A stretch of DNA of 63,585 nucleotides, the filler included, from Sluysia triapertura (taxonomy: Eukaryota), in assembly GCA_046118255.1 (NCBI GenBank). It is 5 parts of 5 records of this genome, joined end to end, with 100 filler letters (N's around TTAATTAATTAA, not from the genome) between each part and the next. Parts side by side here need not be neighbours in the genome. Positions count along the whole stretch, not along the records: positions 40,029 to 51,375 come from JBJNIA010185712.1; 4 more parts are not named here. One strand, given 5' to 3'. A program made the translations under genes and the position numbers. The notes beneath the pieces were generated by a model. That model was not told the origin of the DNA. It did no database searches and saw nothing but the letters and a program-made list of their open reading frames with translations. Within the stretch, counting starts at the first letter, position 1. Each line of letters opens with the position of its first letter. Positions 40,029-51,375 of the stretch are shown here, piece after piece.

Positions 40029-41498
40029 AAATTATCTTCATTGAATTATCTAATAATTCACAAATTTCGCTAATTTTTAATAACAAAGTCTCCTTTTTCA
40101 TTTTTAAATACAATCTGTATTTAATATTTCATATTTTTTATTATATTATCAATGCCATTTTCGAACGTTAAATTCTTCATTTTTCAAACAAAAATAATAT
40201 TCAAAGAACAGAAGAATTACATTGGTTGCCAATAAAAGGAAGAATAGAATTCAAAATCATGACAATAATTTACAAATGCTAACATTATGGAAGTCCCGGA
40301 TATCTTTTAGAAATAATATGAAAATTGGAAATGAAGATGAATATTTCAGTGAGGCATGCTAATATGTAAAGAAAATACAGTAATCACAAGCTAGGTGATA
40401 GGTTGTCTACCGTTAGTCTCAAAAATATACAACCAGTACTACCAGAGAATGTCCAATTATTGGAAGATTATGAAATATTTAAGAAAAAAGCAAAGTTCAT
40501 TCTGTTTCAGAAATAGTATGGTGAATGATTTACCTTAGCACTCTTGAGTACTTACGCAGTAGATAAGAGGGCACTATTAATTAATATATTATTATTAAAA
40601 ACCTATTAAAATAACAAATTTTTAACGTTATCTAAGTCGACATGTTTCTTAACATTTCAACATTAGGAATAATAACAAAATTCAACATTATACACTAATT
40701 CTATTGTTATTTTATCATGCACAATAAATGCACGTTTATATTTTAACAAGAAAAGGGCTCTCTCTTCGTATATTTCTTTCTTACATTGTTTTGCAAAATT
40801 TCTCTTTTTGAGTTCATAAATTTTGTAAATTGAATTAATAACGATCCGTTTAAATCATTTCCCAAAACAAAATTACATAGTTTTAAATTTCGAAAATAAG
40901 TCACCTTTTACGGAAAACCGGTTCTACGATACTTATTCTTTGTAGATCCTTTTTTAATAGGATCAAATACAAAATCAGTGATATCAACCTCGCTTATATA
41001 TATCCCCTTAATATTAAAACAGATCACGTTTAGACATTTAATAACTGTAGAGATATTTAACAAATGATATAATTTAAAAAGGATATTATTACTATTACTA
41101 TCATTACCAATTGACACTTAAGAAAGATATTTAGATTATATCCATACTTTTCTTGAAATCCTACGAACTACCCCTTAAGTGTAGGTGTAATTAAAATCAA
41201 AAAATTAACACTATTCCGTGTTGAATTGTTACAGTTAATGTTATTTTTCTTCAAATCTTTTACGTTTAGTTTCATTTTCATCAATTTCTAGAATAATTTC
41301 AGTTTTTCTAAGACCATTAATAAGCATTATTTGATATTTTTGAAATTTTTTTACTTCATCCAAATTATATTTTCATTTTAGCAATTTTTATTTTCTACTA
41401 TCAATAAATAAAACACATTTTATTGCATAAATTAAATTTTATATAAAGCTGTTTATGTCTGAATATTCAATAATTAAAAAGATCAATATAACGTTAAT

Positions 41499-43478
41499 AT
41501 GAATCTGTTTAATGGATATGATGACACAAAATTTACATATAAACTCCCTATTCCGCCAGAATTTACACTCCGCCAAAATCGACGTCATGTTTTTCATGTG
41601 CCCAACTTTATTCCCTATGACAGTGCGTCTACCAGATGGATATTAACTATGCTTACAAATAAATGCAACATCAACAGATTAATAAAATGTAGCAGATCAA
41701 ATCCGTCGATATTTTCTCGTCTTTATCAAATTCCTGATCGCCCGATGGAGATTCTGGGGCCTGATTATTCTCTGGAAAACTCCGCCTATCATCAGCAATT
41801 CATTCTTTATCTAACACCACTATCCTTAGCGCTCTACTTGAAGCAAAACTTTGCTGTTGAATTATTGTTAACATTGAAAGACGAAAGTGGCCAAAAAATA
41901 GTCCATCCAGCGGAGCCGTGCTTTGTTCAAAAAGTATATCGGAAGAGCAGCACGAGGGAGTCAAGCGAACTGTTCAATTCGTTCCCAATCATAATTGCAA
42001 TTCGCCGAAATTATTACGAAGGTGTGGGCTTGTTGACTCAGTTCGGCTATACACCTCAGAAACAATTTTCGATTATTTATCGTGCTCCGTTTCGTGAAAC
42101 AATTTTACTGTATCGCGACATCATCGATTATATAACGGAATTATTGCGATCGAAGCCGGGATTGAATGTGAAGAAATTTTTAAGAATTCTCAGCGATCCT
42201 TCATTAGGATTGACTATGTTCGATATTTTCGTTTATGATCTGGAACTCAACACATCGGCCACGTGGGACTATGTCAGCATTTTTCGTCGGGTGGCTCGAT
42301 TAGGCCTGGAAAATCGAATATTTCGTGATGAAAGTTTGACTCAATTATTAAACATTCTGGAACAAATTCAATCGATGGGTTACTTTCGTGGAGCCGCCTA
42401 TCTGACTGTGTTTTACAATGGCACTCCACCGTGTTTTCTTGAACGTCCGTTGTCGGAAGAAGAAATTCAAGAATTAGCTGCAGATTCTAGGATATCTATC
42501 ATTATGGATCGTATACCGACCATTTTGAAAGCAACTCGAGACGACATATTCAAATTGCCGACAGAAGAATTCAAGACGTACTTAAATTACGATTATCAAT
42601 GTTGTGTCGGCATTTTATTTGTAATGCTACAAAGAAATTTACTGCAAGAACGTGAATATCACTTCTTAAAGGTAGCAGGTTTGTTGTCGAAAATTATTCT
42701 CGATACGGAACTGGTAACACATTTTTTTCAAACAAGCGATGACGATTTGGCGAAACTGTTCAGCCAATGGACTTTGGAACCATTAAAAACGAGAACTGTT
42801 ACTGAACTGCGAGCCCGCATGCAAGACTACATCACCTTTAATGATGCTACATGTATTACCTTTCTTAATAAGTATGGCAAAGTTCCGTACGATTTAATAA
42901 ATGCCCCCATTTTGTATAAACGTAACCCGGAGAATTCCGCCATTATTCGTAATTTTAATTTAAATAATCACATCGCACAAAGTGACGCACAAGAATTGAA
43001 ATCTGAACTAGTTTTCGACGAGAATGTTAGTAATACTTGTATATTCAATGTTTTAGACGACAAAGATCAGATTATGTTTAAACTGATTCCGTCCAATCAT
43101 AAGCGCTCATTTTCTGAAAACAATCTCACCCAAATCAATGTCAATTCGAGTGTCAAGTACAACTGTAAAAAGCCTCCAAAACCAAACAATCACAAACCGA
43201 AAAGGGTGTCTCAAAAGTCTGTTTCACAATCAGAAACAGTAAAATTGCCTATTAAATCATTAAAAGACGAAGTTTTGGAATGTAATGCAGGTATTGAGTT
43301 AGTAAAAGAGATTCAGAAACGAGAAACAACCAGATTGGACAATTTGAATAATAATTATACTACTACTATAATTATGAATTATATGGATGAATTACAACGA
43401 CAAACTAACAATGGATGCAAATTTATGTCCGTCAACAAAACCACTTCAGATTCAAAAGGTCTTCATAAACCTACTTGA
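41499..43478 (+). CDS. 659-aa intronless protein with degenerate ankyrin-like repeats, function unknown
   Basis: Long ATG-to-TGA ORF with higher GC. LTPLSLALYLKQNFAVELLL and FPIIIAIRRNYYEGVGLLTQFG fit the TPLhxA...V.LL..G ankyrin pattern. Confidence 0.85.
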   Translation: MNLFNGYDDTKFTYKLPIPPEFTLRQNRRHVFHVPNFIPYDSASTRWILTMLTNKCNINRLIKCSRSNPSIFSRLYQIPDRPMEILGPDYSLENSAYHQQFILYLTPLSLALYLKQNFAVELLLTLKDESGQKIVHPAEPCFVQKVYRKSSTRESSELFNSFPIIIAIRRNYYEGVGLLTQFGYTPQKQFSIIYRAPFRETILLYRDIIDYITELLRSKPGLNVKKFLRILSDPSLGLTMFDIFVYDLELNTSATWDYVSIFRRVARLGLENRIFRDESLTQLLNILEQIQSMGYFRGAAYLTVFYNGTPPCFLERPLSEEEIQELAADSRISIIMDRIPTILKATRDDIFKLPTEEFKTYLNYDYQCCVGILFVMLQRNLLQEREYHFLKVAGLLSKIILDTELVTHFFQTSDDDLAKLFSQWTLEPLKTRTVTELRARMQDYITFNDATCITFLNKYGKVPYDLINAPILYKRNPENSAIIRNFNLNNHIAQSDAQELKSELVFDENVSNTCIFNVLDDKDQIMFKLIPSNHKRSFSENNLTQINVNSSVKYNCKKPPKPNNHKPKRVSQKSVSQSETVKLPIKSLKDEVLECNAGIELVKEIQKRETTRLDNLNNNYTTTIIMNYMDELQRQTNNGCKFMSVNKTTSDSKGLHKPT

Positions 43479-45359
43479 TCGATAAATTTAATTAATTTAT
43501 TTTCTTCGTTCAAAATGTAAATTGCAAATAATTTACGTGTTATAAATTTTGCAGTTTAATTGGAACACAAGAGTACACAACTTTTTCAATCTGTCTCAAC
43601 TTTAAATTTCAATTATTTGAAAAAAATACCAAATAAACTTATAAAAATTGTTATATTTTAATTTCAATTTGATTAATTCGTAGTTTTTATTTCACATTTT
43701 GAAGAAAAAGGAAGTTTTTGCCCTTTTTTGGCAAATTTGGCGCCATATTTTATGAATTTATGACAGTTAACAGGACCTTTATTATTTGGTAAATAATATG
43801 GAAAATTTGTTTTTAATGATACTGTACAAATGAAACATTTTCAATAAAACTTGAAATTTGACGAAGATAATAAATATAATATCTATTGTTGTGCTTTTAA
43901 TTAATTTATTAGGCAAACATTTTTGGATTATTGATAATAAATCATAGTAGAATTTAACATTGGAAAGTTTTTAAATGGTTTTTGCTAAAAACACCTCTTG
44001 CAAAAGAAAATTAAATTCGAAATGATAAAAATTTGTCGATTCATTAATTAAGTGTGGAAAATGTATGAAACTGTAGATGTTACATTAACTAAATGGAGAC
44101 AGTTTCTTGATAAATACTAAATAAGGTATCACTGAAATTATAAATAGAAAGTGATTGTGTGAAAATTATTGATTTTTAAAGAATAATTAAGTTTGGTTGC
44201 CAGAAGAGAATGGTGTAAGTAATGTAACTGTAAGATAATATATAATTTTTAAAAAACGTTTACTCATTTTATTCTTTACGAAGAATTTATCAAGTCACAA
44301 AGCGTCTTTTGTTCGACAGAGCGATACACTTTTGTAGAATGAATTTAAGTTTTTATATCCTCGAAGTAAAATAATAATATAAAAGTAAAACACAATCAAT
44401 GTGTCCTGATAAAATAAAAGGTCACATCAAAGAATGAAGGTTAAAGTTAAAATATTTAACTTTAATTTAAATGTTTGATATTCGTCTATTTTAATCAACA
44501 ATTTAATGTTGCGACACTTCAATCAAAATTAATAACAACTCAATAACAATTAATTTTGATTGAAGTATCAATAAATTTAATAATCATAAAATCAAAATAC
44601 AAGTTATTGCAATAACACAAATTAATTTGTTACTTCTTTGGTAATTCCTTATTACAACCCAATTTATTTCAATCTAGTATTAAATTTAAAATTTAAAAAG
44701 ATCACAAAGATTCGAGCTCAATTATAACAATACAATATAGATACATTGTTTCAGTTAAAAAATGATAAAGAAAGGTGACGTAACACAAAAGTTAGATTAT
44801 TTTTTCAAATTAAAAACTTTCCAAAAATGGTTTTAAATTTTATTGTAAACAAAATAAATTTATTGTAAATAAATTATATTGCAAATTTTATAAGTAAATA
44901 AAGAGTGACATTCTTCGGAAATAACTGTAATTTTATTATTAACAAATTTCAATAATTAAATTAGTCTGAAATCTCGATATAGTTATCACAAAATACAAAA
45001 TACTAATTGATCCCTTCTAAAAATTAAAAGCTATTAACTGCAGATCAAGTTTACTCTTCAATTAATTAACAAACAAAATGTTTAAAATAATTGTAAATTT
45101 TTAAAAATAAATCAGGAGGACTCTTCCCCACAATAAAATTAAAATAATCAATAAAAATCAAAATTATACTTGATGAATGGATCTTATATCACTATATCAT
45201 CAGTATTGCAGTTGTGTTACTTGTTACTGTGAAATGTATAAATATTATACTTTCTTATCATCCAATTATTCTTGAATGTTACAATCAAACAAATAATCAC
45301 AAAATTCTTTGAGAATTAGACTGACGTTACATTGTACATTACTCTGCCCGATCTTCTCA

Positions 45360-45585
45360 TAAAAAATGAATTTATTTTTATTTTTTTGAATTCAATTAAT
45401 TTTCGGTTTGTCACATCTAATTTTCATCTGAAAAATGCTTAAGGATCTTACTTTCAAATTCAATTCTAGATTCTCCTCTTTCATAGCAATCATCTCATAT
45501 TCAATTCATTATCTTTTCATCATTCTAAGTATAAAAAGTCAACATTCCTTAATTAAGAATTAATTAAAATTTGGCTTTCCACATT
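45360..45585 (-). repeat. Family A fragment
   Basis: Reverse complement of ~32040-32240 (TTTCATAGCAATCATCTC.TATTCAATTCA). Confidence 0.7.
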
Positions 45586-47811
45586 ATTAAGACTTATTGG
45601 TACACAATAGGTTTACTCTACCATGATGAATGACAGAAGTAATAAAATATACATATTTTTATAATATGGAATGATTAATTAATGTAGTTCATCATATTGC
45701 GTCTAATTTAAAAATAAGTCAATAATCAAATTAATACGAGATCTCAATATATTCTCAGCTACCTCAATAAATTATAACAATATACCTTCAATATATAAAT
45801 TCAACAATTATAAATCACTGTCTTATGTACTAAATCTATAAAATCCAGGGGTGACACAACACGATAAATGTTGACACTCGTATTAATAATAACAAAAAAC
45901 AATAACGTAAGCTACTAACTCTAACAATAAAACAATTAGTTACAAAGTTTATTCAGCCGCAGAAGATGAGTCCTCAAACAGAGATGTCGTCAACTCCACA
46001 TCTACACATCACAATCACAAACACATTTCATCACAGATCTACATTTCATACATAAATAAAATGATAAACAAGTTACTCGACACATTCAAAACAAATAAAG
46101 TCATATTGTATAATTACTATAAATTTATGGTTATTGTTATCACAATACTGTACAATAATTCTTTTTTAATTTTAATTTTATAATTGTTACCATTATGACT
46201 TTTGTTGTCACAATTGTTTTCCTATTTCGTTCTCTTTCCGTTTGTATGAATGTATTTTTATTATTTCTAACTTTTTATCACTATTATACTACAAAAAATG
46301 AAAGTCTTACATTTAATTTCTACAATATAACGTGATCCAGAATGACCATCATAAAACTTCCAAAAGATGCTAATTAATCATGAAATTTAACAGCATTATT
46401 TATACACTGATCAGTTTATATTTATTCAGTAAAATGTCTTATTACTTCTCAACGAGGAATATAGGTGTGTGATTTTTAAGGCAACAAAATTGTGGCTTGT
46501 TCCAATTTCGTTTGGTGATTGCCAGATGAAAAAACTAATCGAATAGTTTGAAGTGTTTGAGAATTTTGCACAACAGAAAGTAGGAATGCATTATAAATAT
46601 TTATTCAAATTCATTCAGATTATGTATAAAATCTTCAACTGAGTTTAGATACAAAGTGTAATAAAGATAGAGTAGCTAAAATATCAAAGAAAAGAAGTTA
46701 TAAAAAATGAGTAATGATTGAACATTTTGTTTCCATACTACTTTTATAAAAACTATTGCATAAATATTTTTAATATCTAAGCAGAATTAAGAGAACATCA
46801 CAAAAATCCAAAAAATTTTAATTGGTTGAAAATTATAAATGATTGAAAATATAATTTTTATCAAAAAATTAATTGCAAATATAGATTATAATAAGAGCCG
46901 TATTTGTTTTTGTAAATACATTTGGAATAAAGCAAACTACTTGAAATTATAAAATAATAAATTAAAATTCAATAATTAATTTTCATGATTACCTAAACAG
47001 ATCGATATTAATCTGTGAAAATGCTTAAAAATTGTAGTACACATTTAATACCGATGATACAATACGGAAATACAATTTATTGAATCGCATACAAATACCA
47101 TATTTAAAACGTAACGTTCTTAGAAATATTGATGATGGTTAGCAAATAATTAATCAGTATCTAAATAAAGTGAATAACCTACCAAAAGATCAAACAAAAC
47201 TGTATTTTATGTTCAACCAAAAAAAAACAAAAAACTGGAAATGTTATCTGATTTGAATTCGATGTTTGTATTATTTTGTTATTTTTTCAATCAATTTTGT
47301 TAATTTGTTTATGGTAATATCTTTTATTTAATCTTAATAATAAAATAAAGTGGTCAAAGTAATCTCCAAAAATAAAATCTTAATTGACTTTAAAATAGTA
47401 TTAAAATAATAATGAAAACAATTAAACAATTTATGATCATATCATGGATCTTTGTAACATATCATCGGGCAAATTGCACTTCTAAAATGTGTTGGGATTA
47501 CCAAACTGTAGATCAGGAGATAAGTAAGAAACATAGAACTATAAAATCAAGGAAGAATTGATACAAAGTGATGGATTGAACATTATAAACATTGTTGAAA
47601 TAATAATCATGAAAAATAAAACATTCATAATCATCTTAAGGTTCCAAAGACCTATCGAAACTTGAGAAGCATTAAGGTTCCTATGAACTTTAGAGCATTT
47701 AAGACCTGAGTAACCTTTAAGTATCTTGGAACATCGATGAGCATTGGAGATCCTGTAGTAATCTTATAAGTGTTTAAAATCTTTAAAATATTTGAGAAAT
47801 AAAATCGTTAT

Positions 47812-48020
47812 GCCTTCTGCATACAATGGGTAATTAACTCAATCTTTCAAATCACCAGCTTCAACACTTTCTACAATCCAATTTGGTGTAACTTTTCTGT
47901 ATAAAGTTATTAAATAATTTTTATTTAAAAGTTCATCATTAGAATAAATTTATTATGATCGTTAAAATACGTTATGAAATATGTAGTGGTATCATCTTTG
48001 TATAAATCAACTTCTCGGAG
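47812..48020 (-). pseudogene. BRCT-domain gene fragment (REV1-like C-terminal signature)
   Basis: TTTYFI...KVTPNWIVESVEAGDLKD*VNYPLY matches the BRCT pattern V.P.WI.ES..AG.L.....Y.LY. A residual acceptor tatacAG precedes KVTP. Confidence 0.65.
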
Positions 48021-48155
48021 TATAAAATCTATTTGTTTATTATCTAAATGCAAATGAGTTATTTTCATTAAATATTGTTCATCAGACTCATCTGGTTTCC
48101 TATTTCCTTTACCACTTGTATTACGTATTGAATTAGGAATTGTTAAGCGTCCCAT
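48021..48155 (-). pseudogene. PPP1R42: N-terminal 45-aa fragment of PPP1R42/LRRC67
   Basis: MGRLT...RNTS..NRKPDESDEQYLMKITHLHLDNKQIDFI resembles the PPP1R42 start (MVRLT..IARN...RKEE...Q.LKKITH....KNIDAI). The LRRs are absent. Confidence 0.75.
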
Positions 48156-48198
48156 TTACGTACGATACACATCAAATAAAATTTAACACATGATAATG

Positions 48199-48345
48199 TG
48201 ATTTAAAAAATTGACTATTAAATATGTCAATCACTTTATCAATAGCATCAATTAAATTCTGATCTGCTGATGGTAATTATAGTTTTTCTCGATAGGTTTC
48301 CAAATGTTCTATGGTTTTTAAGGCCTCATTGCGATCCATTGGTAT
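48199..48345 (-). pseudogene. L27 domain fragment, DLG1/SAP97-like
   Basis: PMDRNEALKTIEHLETYREKL*LPSADQNLIDAIDKVIDIFNSQFFKS versus the DLG1 L27 pattern RALHLLEEYRSKL...[22 protein letters not shown]. One in-frame stop. Confidence 0.75.
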
Positions 48346-48384
48346 TTTTAAAATGATCCAATCTTTAACTTACAAAACCTTCTA

Positions 48385-48825
48385 TTTTTATTAATTTCTT
48401 TTTCGGTTTAATGAGCTTTGTGTTGCCACTCTTGATACATTGTTTTCAATGATTAAGTTGTTCGGTCAACAAACAAGATTAATGATGACAGTCTTCTTTA
48501 AGCTGCTACTTGCATCTTTCATATCATTATTTTTCTTGAAAATCAGCTTATAAGTATGACTGAAGACGTTGTAATTCAGTTTCTCCAGAAGCCAATTGAT
48601 GTTCACGTTGTGTCAGATTTGTCAGTGTTGTATGAAGTGCTTTTTCTAACTCTTCATATTCAGATATCCTCTTCTTCAGAAATTCTTTTTCTTTATCTCT
48701 TTTTTAATATTCCTGAGCTAGATTAATCATAACTTGATTTTCTGAATAATTTTCTTTTTCTTTCAGTTGATTCGGAAGCAATGCTTCTTTAATTTCAATT
48801 CAAAAGCTACAAAGATATTCTTTTG
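48385..48825 (-). pseudogene. CEP120: CEP120 coiled-coil fragment
   Basis: NQLKEKE...MINLAQEY*KRDKEKEFLKKRISEYEELEKALHTTLTNLTQREHQLASGETELQR...KEDCHH aligns by eye with CEP120 NQLKQKE..MQALAEEWKKRDRERE..KKKVAEY..LE..LQKTL.DLEKREQQLAS.ESELQR...KEDCIHQ. Several stops. Confidence 0.8.
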
Positions 48826-49869
48826 CATAATTGGTGGTAGTGGAAAAGAGAAGTAAGAGTGAGAGATAGTGTTATGCAAGTAAATTAAAGGAATCTGAAG
48901 TTGTAGAGTACGAGGAGTGATATAAAGTTATAAGGAAGCGAGAATAACTATGTTTATATTATCACATTTCATTATTTTATGTCACTTTTTCTTATATATA
49001 TTTTAAATTCTCTTACATTTAAACCTATATTTTTATACACTAACTGGACAATCCCAACAGTTAAAATATAAAAAAATATAATATAAAATAAAAAATAAGA
49101 CACTCAGTAATATCATAATAGTAAATAATAAAGTTAATAAAATTAAGATAAAAATAATAACAGTGTTGCGCCTTTGAAAATTATTAAATTATTTAAAATA
49201 AATATCAATTTAATGAGCTTAAAAAGAATCTAAATTATTTAAGTATTCACTAGATCAAATATAAATATTTAATAATTCTCTTATTTAATATCAATAATTA
49301 TTCACCCCAAAATTAAGCTCTTGGAAATCAAATCAATAATAACAACACAACAATTTACTGGTTAAATAAAAAACAATTACCAATTAGTATTATTATAATT
49401 CTCTATTAAGCAGTACTAAAAATGATTAAAATGACGAGATTAACAATAACCTTTATAACAGTCTATCAAAAGAAACCAGAGGGATGCAACACTATGAAAA
49501 AATATTAACTATTATTCACGATTATCAAATATAAATTTTTCAACACATTCACAAGAACAAAAACTATTGGATAAAATCCTCCAAAAAAATAATAATACTT
49601 TTAATTATAAAATAAATTCAAAAGTTACTTAAATCATGGATCTTCTCATTTGCATTACTAATTGTTATTATTGTTGTATTGTTGTGGTTGTTGTTGCTTT
49701 TTTTTTTAAATTTTTAAGTTTTCCTTTTTATATTTTCTCATCATCAAATAATTTCCAATTTTTGATTAAACATTTTCACATACATATCAATGCAATATTC
49801 TTTGAGAATTAATCCGACAATAATAACTTTGACACTTACAGGGTACAGATTGTCAACCTTTATTAGATA

Positions 49870-50540
49870 CAGAACACAGTTTCAAATTCAACAGAGCATT
49901 CCTCATTCAAATGTTATCCAAAAAACGTAATTTTTCTTAATTAAGTTAATTACGAATTTAATTAATTAATCTATTTTTAGACTTAATCTTATTCTTTGTT
50001 TAATGGTTTCATTGAGGTTCTAAAGCTATTTAGTAATTTATAAGGCATTCAAGAGGCTCTACATATTTTCACCTCCACATCTCTGATTTCTTTTTCTACT
50101 TATTCATGTTTATTATTACCTTATTAAACTTATATTTTTATTTTGAACAACGATTTTATTTCTCAAACATTTTCTAGATTTTATACACTTTATAATATTA
50201 CTCGAAGATCTGTGATGCTTATCAAGGTTTCCAGAATACTTAATGGTTGATAGAGTCTTGGATGATCTCAAAATTAACAAGCAAATTGTGTTCTAATACC
50301 TTCGATGGTTTTTCAAGTCCTCTTCAAGCCTGTACAAGGTCTTGACAGCTTATATAGGTCTTTGTAATGTCAAGGTATTCTTTAGATGTCAAAATTACCA
50401 TAAATGCTTTAATTTTTAAGACTCTCATTTCAACGCTGCCTACAACGCTCAATCCTTCACTTGGTATCAGTTCTTTCTTTATTATATAGTTCTGTATGTT
50501 TCTCAGGCATTTTCTGATACACAGTAAGATAATCCCAACA
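49870..50540 (-). mobile_element. Dispersed repeat family A copy
   Basis: Reverse complement of 16579-17240, ending AATCCCAACA at 50540. Confidence 0.85.
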
Positions 50541-51375
50541 ACATACATACTATAAAATAATAGAAAACCATAGTATAAATGAAATAACATCAAAAAAGTA
50601 ATTTTACTATATATTAGAAAATGTCATTATTATGGAAAAGATCGAATATAAATAGAAGCGTTCTTTTAATCATATAAATGCGTTATTTATATTAAGTAAC
50701 AAATTATATCAAGTGTTGATTGTCAGTGTGGTGGCCCTGCCTACACCTACCTAAATATCACATCAATCATAACATTCATCGACATAAACCTCATCACAAA
50801 AAAATTACATTATAATAAGTCTCACCTATATCATTCACAACATTACAACACTCACCTTTATAAAATATCACATGTCTAATAAAAATTCTTTTACTAACAC
50901 CATTTTATCAAAGTAAAGCACAACATATTGTCACTTTTCATCATTATGATACAATATCTTCCTTTCTGTATTTTATAACCTCTTTATCTTATATTTCTCT
51001 ATATTTTACAATTTTTTAATAATTTCCTTTTAACAAAAAAAATCAATGTGCCAAATATTAAAGAAAAGTACAAACTATTGTAAACAGAAAAGATAAATTA
51101 TCAACAAGGATTAACTGAACTTAAAAATGATTACGATAAAGATGTTGTACTTAATGAAGCTCACTCATCAAAGAAAAAAAGTATGAAGAAACACGGTCGT
51201 TAAAATGTTGCGTCTTTAAAAATTACTGGCTATTACGACTCAATATTAACTTGGTTAGCTTAACGGAATCTCTATAATTTAAATAGTCAATATATCAAAT
51301 ATATTTTTTCAATAATCTTCTCGTATAGTATCACTAACTATTATCCCCAAATTTAAGTACCTGACAATAAAAATC

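What the first reader, a model, noticed from the sequence alone, without database searches (positions are those of the whole stretch)
47490..49059. Candidate gene-capturing (Pack-type) transposon: four unrelated host gene fragments fused head to tail
Seen: within ~1 kb on the minus strand, in order, lie a CEP120-like coiled coil (48825-48385), a DLG1-like L27 domain (48345-48199), the first 45 codons of a PPP1R42-like gene (48155-48021) fused in frame to a BRCT fragment (48020-47812). All have the same orientation, are separated by 0-45 bp and mostly carry stops. The block abuts a family A repeat cut at 47806 and is bracketed by the inverted decamer TGTTGGGATT/AATCCCAACA. Residual splice signals (GTAAGT at 48374-48369, tatacAG ~47898) suggest capture from genomic DNA rather than mRNA. 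Known: Pack-MULEs, Helitrons and Pack-TIR/CACTA elements concatenate co-oriented gene fragments. Inference: a TGT...ACA-ended element family doing this in this animal lineage may be undescribed. It could generate chimeric exons or small RNAs against the parent genes. Two of the donors (CEP120, PPP1R42) are centriole-associated, which may be chance.
Basis: partly seen in the sequence, partly recalled or inferred. Interest (0 to 1): 0.9.

Follow-up and report, generated by a model that had tools for sequence, protein, structure and literature searches.

The report
Repeat ends holding four gene scraps
Decayed pieces of four unrelated host genes lie fused head to tail between the ends of a very abundant jumping-DNA family in an unnamed animal, a real case of gene-scrap capture that looks more like copying from messenger RNA than from chromosomal DNA, though the carrier family and its mobility are not proven.

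Summary
The block is real. Error-free contigs of the one public run that holds it bridge four of its joints. Three pieces have tool support: an exon of a leucine-rich-repeat gene (PPP1R42 by recall; homologues E 6e-8 to 4e-11), L27_1 (Pfam E 0.0016) and a REV1-type BRCT (top four PDB hits, weak E). CEP120 rests on recall only. Both ends are repeated termini of an abundant TGTTG-ended family and form an imperfect ~110-bp inverted repeat. The cargo is low-copy and there is no target-site duplication, so the unit is not shown to have moved as a whole. About 93% of the cargo is coding, and all four pieces are sense. The PPP1R42-like piece stops exactly at a splice donor conserved in three animal relatives, with no GT left. 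The claimed acceptor lies inside BRCT coding sequence. One GTAAGT still points to DNA. Best reading: serial capture, probably from RNA templates, inside an integrase-type (Ginger2- or LTR-like) non-autonomous element. Rivals are DNA gap filling (Pack-TIR) and a Helentron. Multi-gene capture is known in animals; this combination of ends and cargo is a new variant.

The parts
47490..47809 (+). Left arm: terminus and first 320 bp of abundant repeat family A, starting TGTTGGGATT, cut where the cargo begins (47806-47813)
   Evidence: 76-77% inverted match to 50149-50540 starting at the same base; 86-128 contigs with other letters at single sites, and joints from 47805/47806 into the 50131 and 49977-49979 sequence of the other copy
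47812..48020 (-). BRCT fragment, REV1-like in its second half; one frame change and one stop
   Evidence: Top four PDB hits all REV1 BRCT, E 0.45-1.2; first half gave no hit; frames
48021..48155 (-). First coding exon (45 codons) of a leucine-rich-repeat gene, PPP1R42/LRRC67 by recall; ends exactly at a conserved phase-0 splice donor, with no GT
   Evidence: P0002 E 5.9e-8; L003-L005 have GT right after codon 45, then LRR exons
47925..48155 (-). Open 76-codon chimeric frame (LRR-gene exon plus first half of BRCT)
   Evidence: the ORF listing; not on record as a called protein; no evidence of expression
48156..48198 (-). 43-bp spacer (5' UTR of the LRR gene and/or tail of the L27 piece); holds no AG acceptor
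   Evidence: Sequence; in L003 and L004 an acceptor-like AG lies about 22 and about 4 nt before the ATG
48199..48354 (-). L27_1 domain fragment, DLG1-like, from about the start codon; one stop
   Evidence: Pfam L27_1 E 0.0016 on 48175-48276; gene name by recall
48368..48373 (-). GTAAGT, possible leftover splice donor after the CEP120-like piece
   Evidence: expected 0.024 times in the 75 nt of spacers, 0.37 times in the whole cargo
48385..48827 (-). Coiled-coil gene fragment, CEP120-like by recall; several stops and frame changes
   Evidence: Frames; coiled-coil look-alikes only; diverged second copy on 48374-48773 (record 5); name not tool-confirmed
48830..48945 (.). Low-copy, pyrimidine-rich (minus strand) segment of unknown origin between cargo and right arm
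   Evidence: Low depth like the cargo; no match to the left arm; GC 0.35
48946..49059 (-). Right arm: repeated terminus ending AATCCCAACA; imperfect inverted homologue of the first ~107 bp of the left arm
   Evidence: 74 of 117 columns identical, beyond the decamer p about 0.002, composition-aware p 0.0007; 81 contigs with another letter at 48981, joint at exactly 49059
50149..50540 (-). Second copy of the family A arm, without gene cargo; runs on as high-copy sequence towards 49850 and possibly to 49164
   Evidence: 49164-50540 is bounded by TGTTG...CAACA with ACAG/ACAT flanks

Best explanation
The block is a dead, low-copy cargo of four host-gene pieces held between two termini of an abundant non-autonomous repeat family with integrase-type ends (TGTTG...CAACA, as in Ginger2 DNA transposons and Gypsy-type LTRs). 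Shown: the pieces, the repeated ends, the cut in the left arm, the decay. Inferred: the pieces were added by serial template switching during copying of the element, mostly from spliced or exon-only RNA templates, which gives sense-strand, intron-free pieces from the 5' or middle part of genes with no poly(A). The PPP1R42-like exon was probably joined to the BRCT piece at its splice donor in an RNA stage. The two ends may come from different copies of the family, which would explain the missing TSD and why the cargo never amplified. It most likely has no protein function today.
For: About 943 of 1,018 bp between 47810 and 48827 are coding-homologous, with spacers of 0, 30 and 43 bp; all four sense (1 in 8 by chance). 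The LRR-gene piece ends at codon 45, where L003, L004 and L005 have a GT donor and P0002 ends in V-stop; the window has CT there and no AG before the ATG. A random break would fall within ~7 nt of that donor about 4% of the time (rough estimate). Ends fit TGTNR (PMC2836005), are highly repeated and related over ~110 bp. Chimeras of up to four genes by RNA template switching are described in animals (PMC5131818). From recall, untested: vertebrate CEP120 and DLG1 have several introns inside the spans that are intron-free here.
Against: RNA template switching is known for LTR elements, which need two direct LTRs; here the arms are inverted, and no primer-binding site or tRNA was seen. No TSD. GTAAGT after the CEP120-like piece suggests genomic DNA at that joint. 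The host's own parent genes were not available, so its intron positions are inferred from relatives. Only one junction was testable. No transposase, integrase or reverse transcriptase frame in the piece.
Confidence: 0.45

Rival explanations
1. Pack-TIR formed at DNA level: a Ginger2-like miniature element with ~110-bp imperfect inverted ends took up genomic pieces by gap filling or fork switching, in several rounds; the exon-exact joint is chance.
For: Imperfect inverted ends of a length typical of Ginger; GTAAGT after the CEP120-like piece; single-copy Pack-TIRs arise by gap filling and scale with family size (PMC8277862); two pieces are gene 5' ends, a bias known for DNA capture by Helitrons (PMC4224331).
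Against: Gap filling keeps the original TSD, and none is seen; it favours nearby, often non-coding donors, whereas 93% of this cargo is coding from four genes; GT missing at a conserved donor.
Confidence: 0.25
2. Helentron/HINE (DINE-1-like rolling-circle element): the decamers are subterminal inverted repeats, the 5' end lies at about 49063, the 3' end 40-60 bp left of 47490, and the cargo was gathered by rolling-circle capture.
For: No TSD; very high family copy number; T-run then a hairpin nested in the right decamer, 49041-49063, seen in 3% of random 40-mers; short palindromes at 47467-47479 and 47432-47441; these features and gene capture are described for Helentrons (PMC4067079).
Against: The two family A copies share nothing beyond the decamer (82% of random pairs score as well); other contigs break at exactly 49059; palindromes like the 3' ones occur in 17% of random 60-mers; the decamer resembles none of the listed subTIRs; ~110 bp of inverted similarity is not expected.
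Confidence: 0.15
3. The cargo was put together by another carrier (for example an LTR element since lost), and the two arms are separate insertions of related ends that happen to flank it.
For: No TSD; the ends are only 63% alike while the two left-type arms are 76% alike; the region is a nest of related termini, including another right-type end near 50925-51040; 49164-50540 looks like a complete unit with a different far end and a near 4-bp TSD; 48830-48945 belongs to neither arm nor cargo.
Against: The left arm is cut exactly where the cargo starts, with no filler; both ends face outward and start at the same decamer.
Confidence: 0.12
4. Assembly chimera or chance resemblance.
For: Only one run holds the stretch and it may be the source sample; CEP120 not tool-confirmed; one joint not bridged in the listed contigs.
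Against: Error-free contigs at depth 19-24 bridge four joints; three pieces have homology hits predicted in advance; stops and frame changes show old decay, not fresh mis-joins.
Confidence: 0.03

Closest known systems
LTR-mediated chimeric retrocopies (mouse four-gene 'Super' retrocopy, maize Bs1; PMC5131818)
   Same: Partial, internal or 5' pieces of up to four genes fused in one locus, no poly(A), TG...CA ends
   Different: Those lie between two direct LTRs; here the arms are inverted and imperfect, with no primer-binding site seen
Pack-TIR elements of animals (PMC8277862), Pack-MULE and Pack-CACTA of plants (PMC6379663)
   Same: Non-autonomous element of 1-2 kb, inverted ends of an abundant family, host cargo replacing the middle, low copy
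   Different: No TSD; cargo nearly all coding from four genes; TGT ends rather than hAT, Tc1/mariner, Mutator or CACTA, the families named there
Ginger2/TDD DNA transposons (PMC2836005)
   Same: TGTNR termini; inverted ends within the 50-180 bp range
   Different: No 4-bp TSD or RTATAY target; ends only 63% alike; no transposase seen; my searches found no report of multi-gene cargo in Ginger
Helentron/HINE and Helitron gene capture (PMC4067079, PMC4224331)
   Same: No TSD, very abundant, short inverted repeats near both ends, serial capture with a 5'-end bias
   Different: Copies end at the decamer with no shared tail; no TC...CTRR ends
Turmoil-1 of C. elegans (PMC2572040)
   Same: Inverted-repeat element of an invertebrate carrying coding pieces of unrelated host genes
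   Different: There two pieces sit inside the inverted repeats and are amplified; here four pieces sit between the ends and are low-copy

Membership tests
Ginger2/TDD | TGTNR termini | tested here: met
   TGTTG at 47490 and, inverted, at 49059 (definition)
Ginger2/TDD | Terminal inverted repeats of 50-180 bp | tested here: inconclusive
   ~110 bp but only 74 of 117 columns identical, p about 0.002
Ginger2/TDD | 4-5 bp TSD at an RTATAY target | tested here: not met
   AATG versus GTTA, 3 of 4 differ; 5 of 5 differ at 5 bp
Ginger2/TDD | Gypsy-integrase-like transposase in an autonomous partner | not testable with these tools
   None in the piece; host genome cannot be searched
Pack-TIR / Pack-TYPE | Ends belong to a multi-copy family whose other copies lack the cargo | tested here: met
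Pack-TIR / Pack-TYPE | Internal sequence from host genes, with an identifiable parent copy | tested here: inconclusive
   Homology to genes of other species; one 87% copy in the run, identity unknown
Pack-TIR / Pack-TYPE | TSD flanking the whole unit | tested here: not met
   3-7 bp none; best 9-mer 6 of 9, not beyond chance in AT-rich DNA
Pack-TIR / Pack-TYPE | Capture at DNA level (introns kept) | tested here: inconclusive
   GT absent at one conserved donor; one GTAAGT present elsewhere
LTR-mediated retrocopy | Cargo between two direct LTRs | tested here: not met
   No long direct repeat flanks the cargo
LTR-mediated retrocopy | Exon-only, intron-free cargo | tested here: inconclusive
   93% coding, exon-exact end; host parent genes not available
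LTR-mediated retrocopy | Microsimilarity at switch points | not testable with these tools
   Needs parent mRNA sequences
Helentron/HINE | No TSD, T-rich target | tested here: inconclusive
   No TSD; T-run beside the right end; empty site not seen
Helentron/HINE | 5' subterminal repeat with nested short inverted repeat | tested here: inconclusive
   6-bp stem at 49041-49063, 3% background
Helentron/HINE | Conserved 38-60 bp tail with palindrome beyond the 3' subterminal repeat | tested here: not met
   Tails beyond 47490 and 50540 are unrelated
Canonical Helitron | 5' TC and 3' CTRR ends with hairpin | tested here: not met
   Repeat boundaries are TGT/ACA
Penelope/Terminon | Hammerhead ribozyme in the terminal repeat | tested here: not met
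   No Rfam match to E 1 in 46000-51375

The most novel reading that the evidence does not exclude
A very abundant inverted-repeat family with integrase-type TGT...ACA ends (Ginger-like, or derived from two inverted LTR ends) routinely collects exons of host genes through an RNA stage, including splice-exact joins, and so acts as a genome-wide exon-shuffling vehicle in this animal lineage. It would combine DNA-transposon ends with retro-type capture.
Probability: 0.15. Interest if true: 0.8.

Novelty: new variant of a known kind. Interest (0 to 1): 0.5.

Why it matters
How transposons pick up several unlinked gene pieces, and whether the template is DNA or RNA, is still argued. This locus has a junction that can decide it once the parent genes are aligned. 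If the family does this at many loci, it adds a TGT...ACA carrier to the short list of animal exon shufflers and could be a source of chimeric exons or small RNAs against host genes. If it is a single dead locus, it is a neat but minor example.

Tried and rejected
CEP120 naming failed in Pfam, PDB, the homologue search, the Atlas, two locus scans and a paper search. P0003 is a tandem-repeat artefact and was dropped. The last homologue search with the 76-codon frame found no candidate. No Rfam, tRNA or viral match. A possible 74-nt intron in the BRCT piece (47970-47897, phases fit) was considered; removing it would delete the middle of the domain, and its 3' part aligns to REV1, so I rate it unlikely but not excluded. 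A degenerate right-type end at ~49843 was not significant. LINE-type chimeric retrocopy rejected: no poly(A), no gene 3' ends. Selection on the 76-codon frame could not be tested without parents. The host was not identified (names coded; relative's run not in papers). The read depths are sums over contigs and are used only as a contrast, not as copy numbers.
Full report
Scope. I worked only on the piece 40029-51375, which holds no N. It is about 25% G+C. The host is an animal I could not name: the one public run that holds the stretch is coded.

Observation. The inverted decamers lie at 47490 and 49050-49059, with a third at 50531-50540. Between them, on the minus strand, four reading frames follow one another. 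The piece at 48155-48021 matched P0002 (E 5.9e-8, 57% identical, no gaps). A profile of the two found seven metagenome loci (E 4e-11 to 1e-6) whose genes run on into leucine-rich repeats. I call the gene PPP1R42/LRRC67 from memory. The piece at 48276-48175 hit Pfam L27_1 alone, E 0.0016. The piece at 47949-47842 had REV1 BRCT domains as its top four PDB hits, E 0.45-1.2; weak alone, but predicted in advance. The CEP120 label is a strong resemblance in my recall, yet no tool confirmed it. The pieces carry stops and frame changes, seven stops in 123 codons of the main CEP120-like frame, so they are decayed.

Is it an artefact? Contigs of run X1 with no differences cover 47782-48080, 48243-48738 and 48714-49002 at depth 19-24. 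They bridge BRCT|PPP1R42, L27|CEP120, CEP120|upstream segment and upstream segment|right arm. The left arm|BRCT joint has only 28-32 letters on the arm side. PPP1R42|L27 is not bridged in the shortened list. X1 may be the source sample, so this is read-level support, not an independent animal.

The ends. The left arm 47490-47809 has a 76-77% inverted copy at 50149-50540 that starts at the same base and carries no gene cargo. In X1, summed depth is 46,000-324,000 over the left arm, about 10,000 over the right end and 38-139 over the cargo. Single arm sites have 81-128 contigs with other letters. The tool warns that this is no copy number; I use it only as a contrast. Other contigs leave the left arm at 47805-47806 and continue as the cargo-free copy does, and two break at exactly 49059. 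So both are true termini of an abundant family, and the left arm is cut where the cargo starts. The right arm is only 48946-49059. It is an imperfect inverted homologue of the first ~107 bp of the left arm: 74 of 117 columns, p about 0.002 beyond the decamer (span chosen after a local alignment), p 0.0007 against local background. There is no TSD of 3-7 bp; the best 9-mer matches 6 of 9. With low-copy cargo and no TSD, the unit is not shown to have moved as a whole. The neighbouring stretch 49164-50540 is also bounded by TGTTG...CAACA, has flanks ACAG/ACAT and a different far end. It may be the family's usual form, which would look more like a solo LTR than an inverted-repeat element.

DNA or RNA template? 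The acceptor near 47898 lies inside the stretch aligned to REV1 and is probably coding. The donor GTAAGT is at 48373-48368; it is expected 0.024 times in the spacers and 0.37 times in the cargo, so it is modest evidence for DNA. Against this: about 93% of 47810-48827 is coding-homologous, spacers are 0, 30 and 43 bp, and all four pieces are sense. In three animal loci (L003-L005) the LRR gene has a GT donor right after codon 45, and P0002 ends there in V-stop; four unicellular-type loci have no intron. The window's piece ends at codon 45 and continues with CT into the BRCT frame. Two relatives also have an acceptor-like AG a few to 22 nt before the ATG, while the window has no AG in the 43 nt upstream. 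A random break would land within ~7 nt of that donor about 4% of the time (rough estimate; one junction tested). From memory, and untested, vertebrate CEP120 and DLG1 have several introns within spans that are continuous here. The balance leans to RNA but is not settled, because the host's own parent genes were out of reach.

Mechanism. Most likely (0.45), the pieces were added one after another by template switching while an element with integrase-type ends was copied, mainly from exon-only RNA, with one splice-exact join. The two ends may come from different copies. Shown: pieces, ends, cut, decay. Inferred: template type, order, carrier. Rivals: DNA-level Pack-TIR of a Ginger2-like family (0.25); Helentron/HINE (0.15), which would explain the missing TSD and a hairpin nested in the right decamer but fails on the unshared tails and the sharp end at 49059; another carrier with two chance neighbours (0.12); artefact (0.03). 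The first three share the core claim of capture within this repeat family, together about 0.85.

Comparison. Ginger ends follow TGTNR, with 50-180 bp inverted repeats and 4-bp TSDs in Ginger2 (PMC2836005); the TSD test fails, so I do not file it as Ginger. Animal Pack-TIRs are mostly single-copy gap fillings in hAT and Tc1/mariner elements (PMC8277862). RNA template switching gives multi-gene chimeras, including a four-gene mouse case, but between direct LTRs (PMC5131818). Helitrons capture serially with a 5'-end bias (PMC4224331). Turmoil-1 carries two gene pieces (PMC2572040). Neighbouring ends can form hybrids in Pack-CACTA (PMC6379663). It works like these; it is a proven member of none.

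Verdict. Real, decayed four-gene cargo between repeated TGT...ACA ends; new variant of a known kind; interest 0.5. It would reach about 0.8 if the family proves to collect exons through RNA at many loci (probability about 0.15).

Noticed in passing
window 41499-43478 (+): Intronless 659-codon frame, about 40% G+C in 25% surroundings, with no Pfam hit and a single homologue (P0001, 52% identical, E 3e-187, from another sequencing run). A fold from two sequences was uninformative (pLDDT 33). Looks like a conserved lineage-specific or acquired gene.
   Followed up: partly
window 49164-50540: Continuous high-copy stretch bounded by TGTTG...CAACA with flanks ACAG/ACAT (3 of 4); may be one 1.4-kb solo-LTR-like unit and the usual form of family A.
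   Followed up: partly
window 49164-49332 and 51206-51372: Two 73% copies of a second terminus type starting TGTTGCG, unrelated to the family A end beyond TGTTG.
   Followed up: partly
window 50925-51040: Another diverged end resembling the right arm 48946-49059, same strand (p 0.0007); the region is a nest of related termini.
   Followed up: partly
window 48374-48773: A 518-letter contig of run X1, about 87% alike, covers the CEP120-like piece and then departs for 136 letters; it may be the parent gene at an intron or a sister copy. Its sequence was not returned (record 5).
   Followed up: no
window 49082 to 47328: One contig at depth 20 runs from just past the right end back to sequence left of the left end with six letters between; unexplained, possibly an AT-rich mismatch or a tandem arrangement (table 5c).
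   Followed up: no
window 45245-45325 and 49728-49818: Diverged direct copies of a further repeat segment.
   Followed up: no
window 46903-47276: The left flank has moderately raised depth and a diverged contig, so it is itself a low-copy repeat.
   Followed up: no
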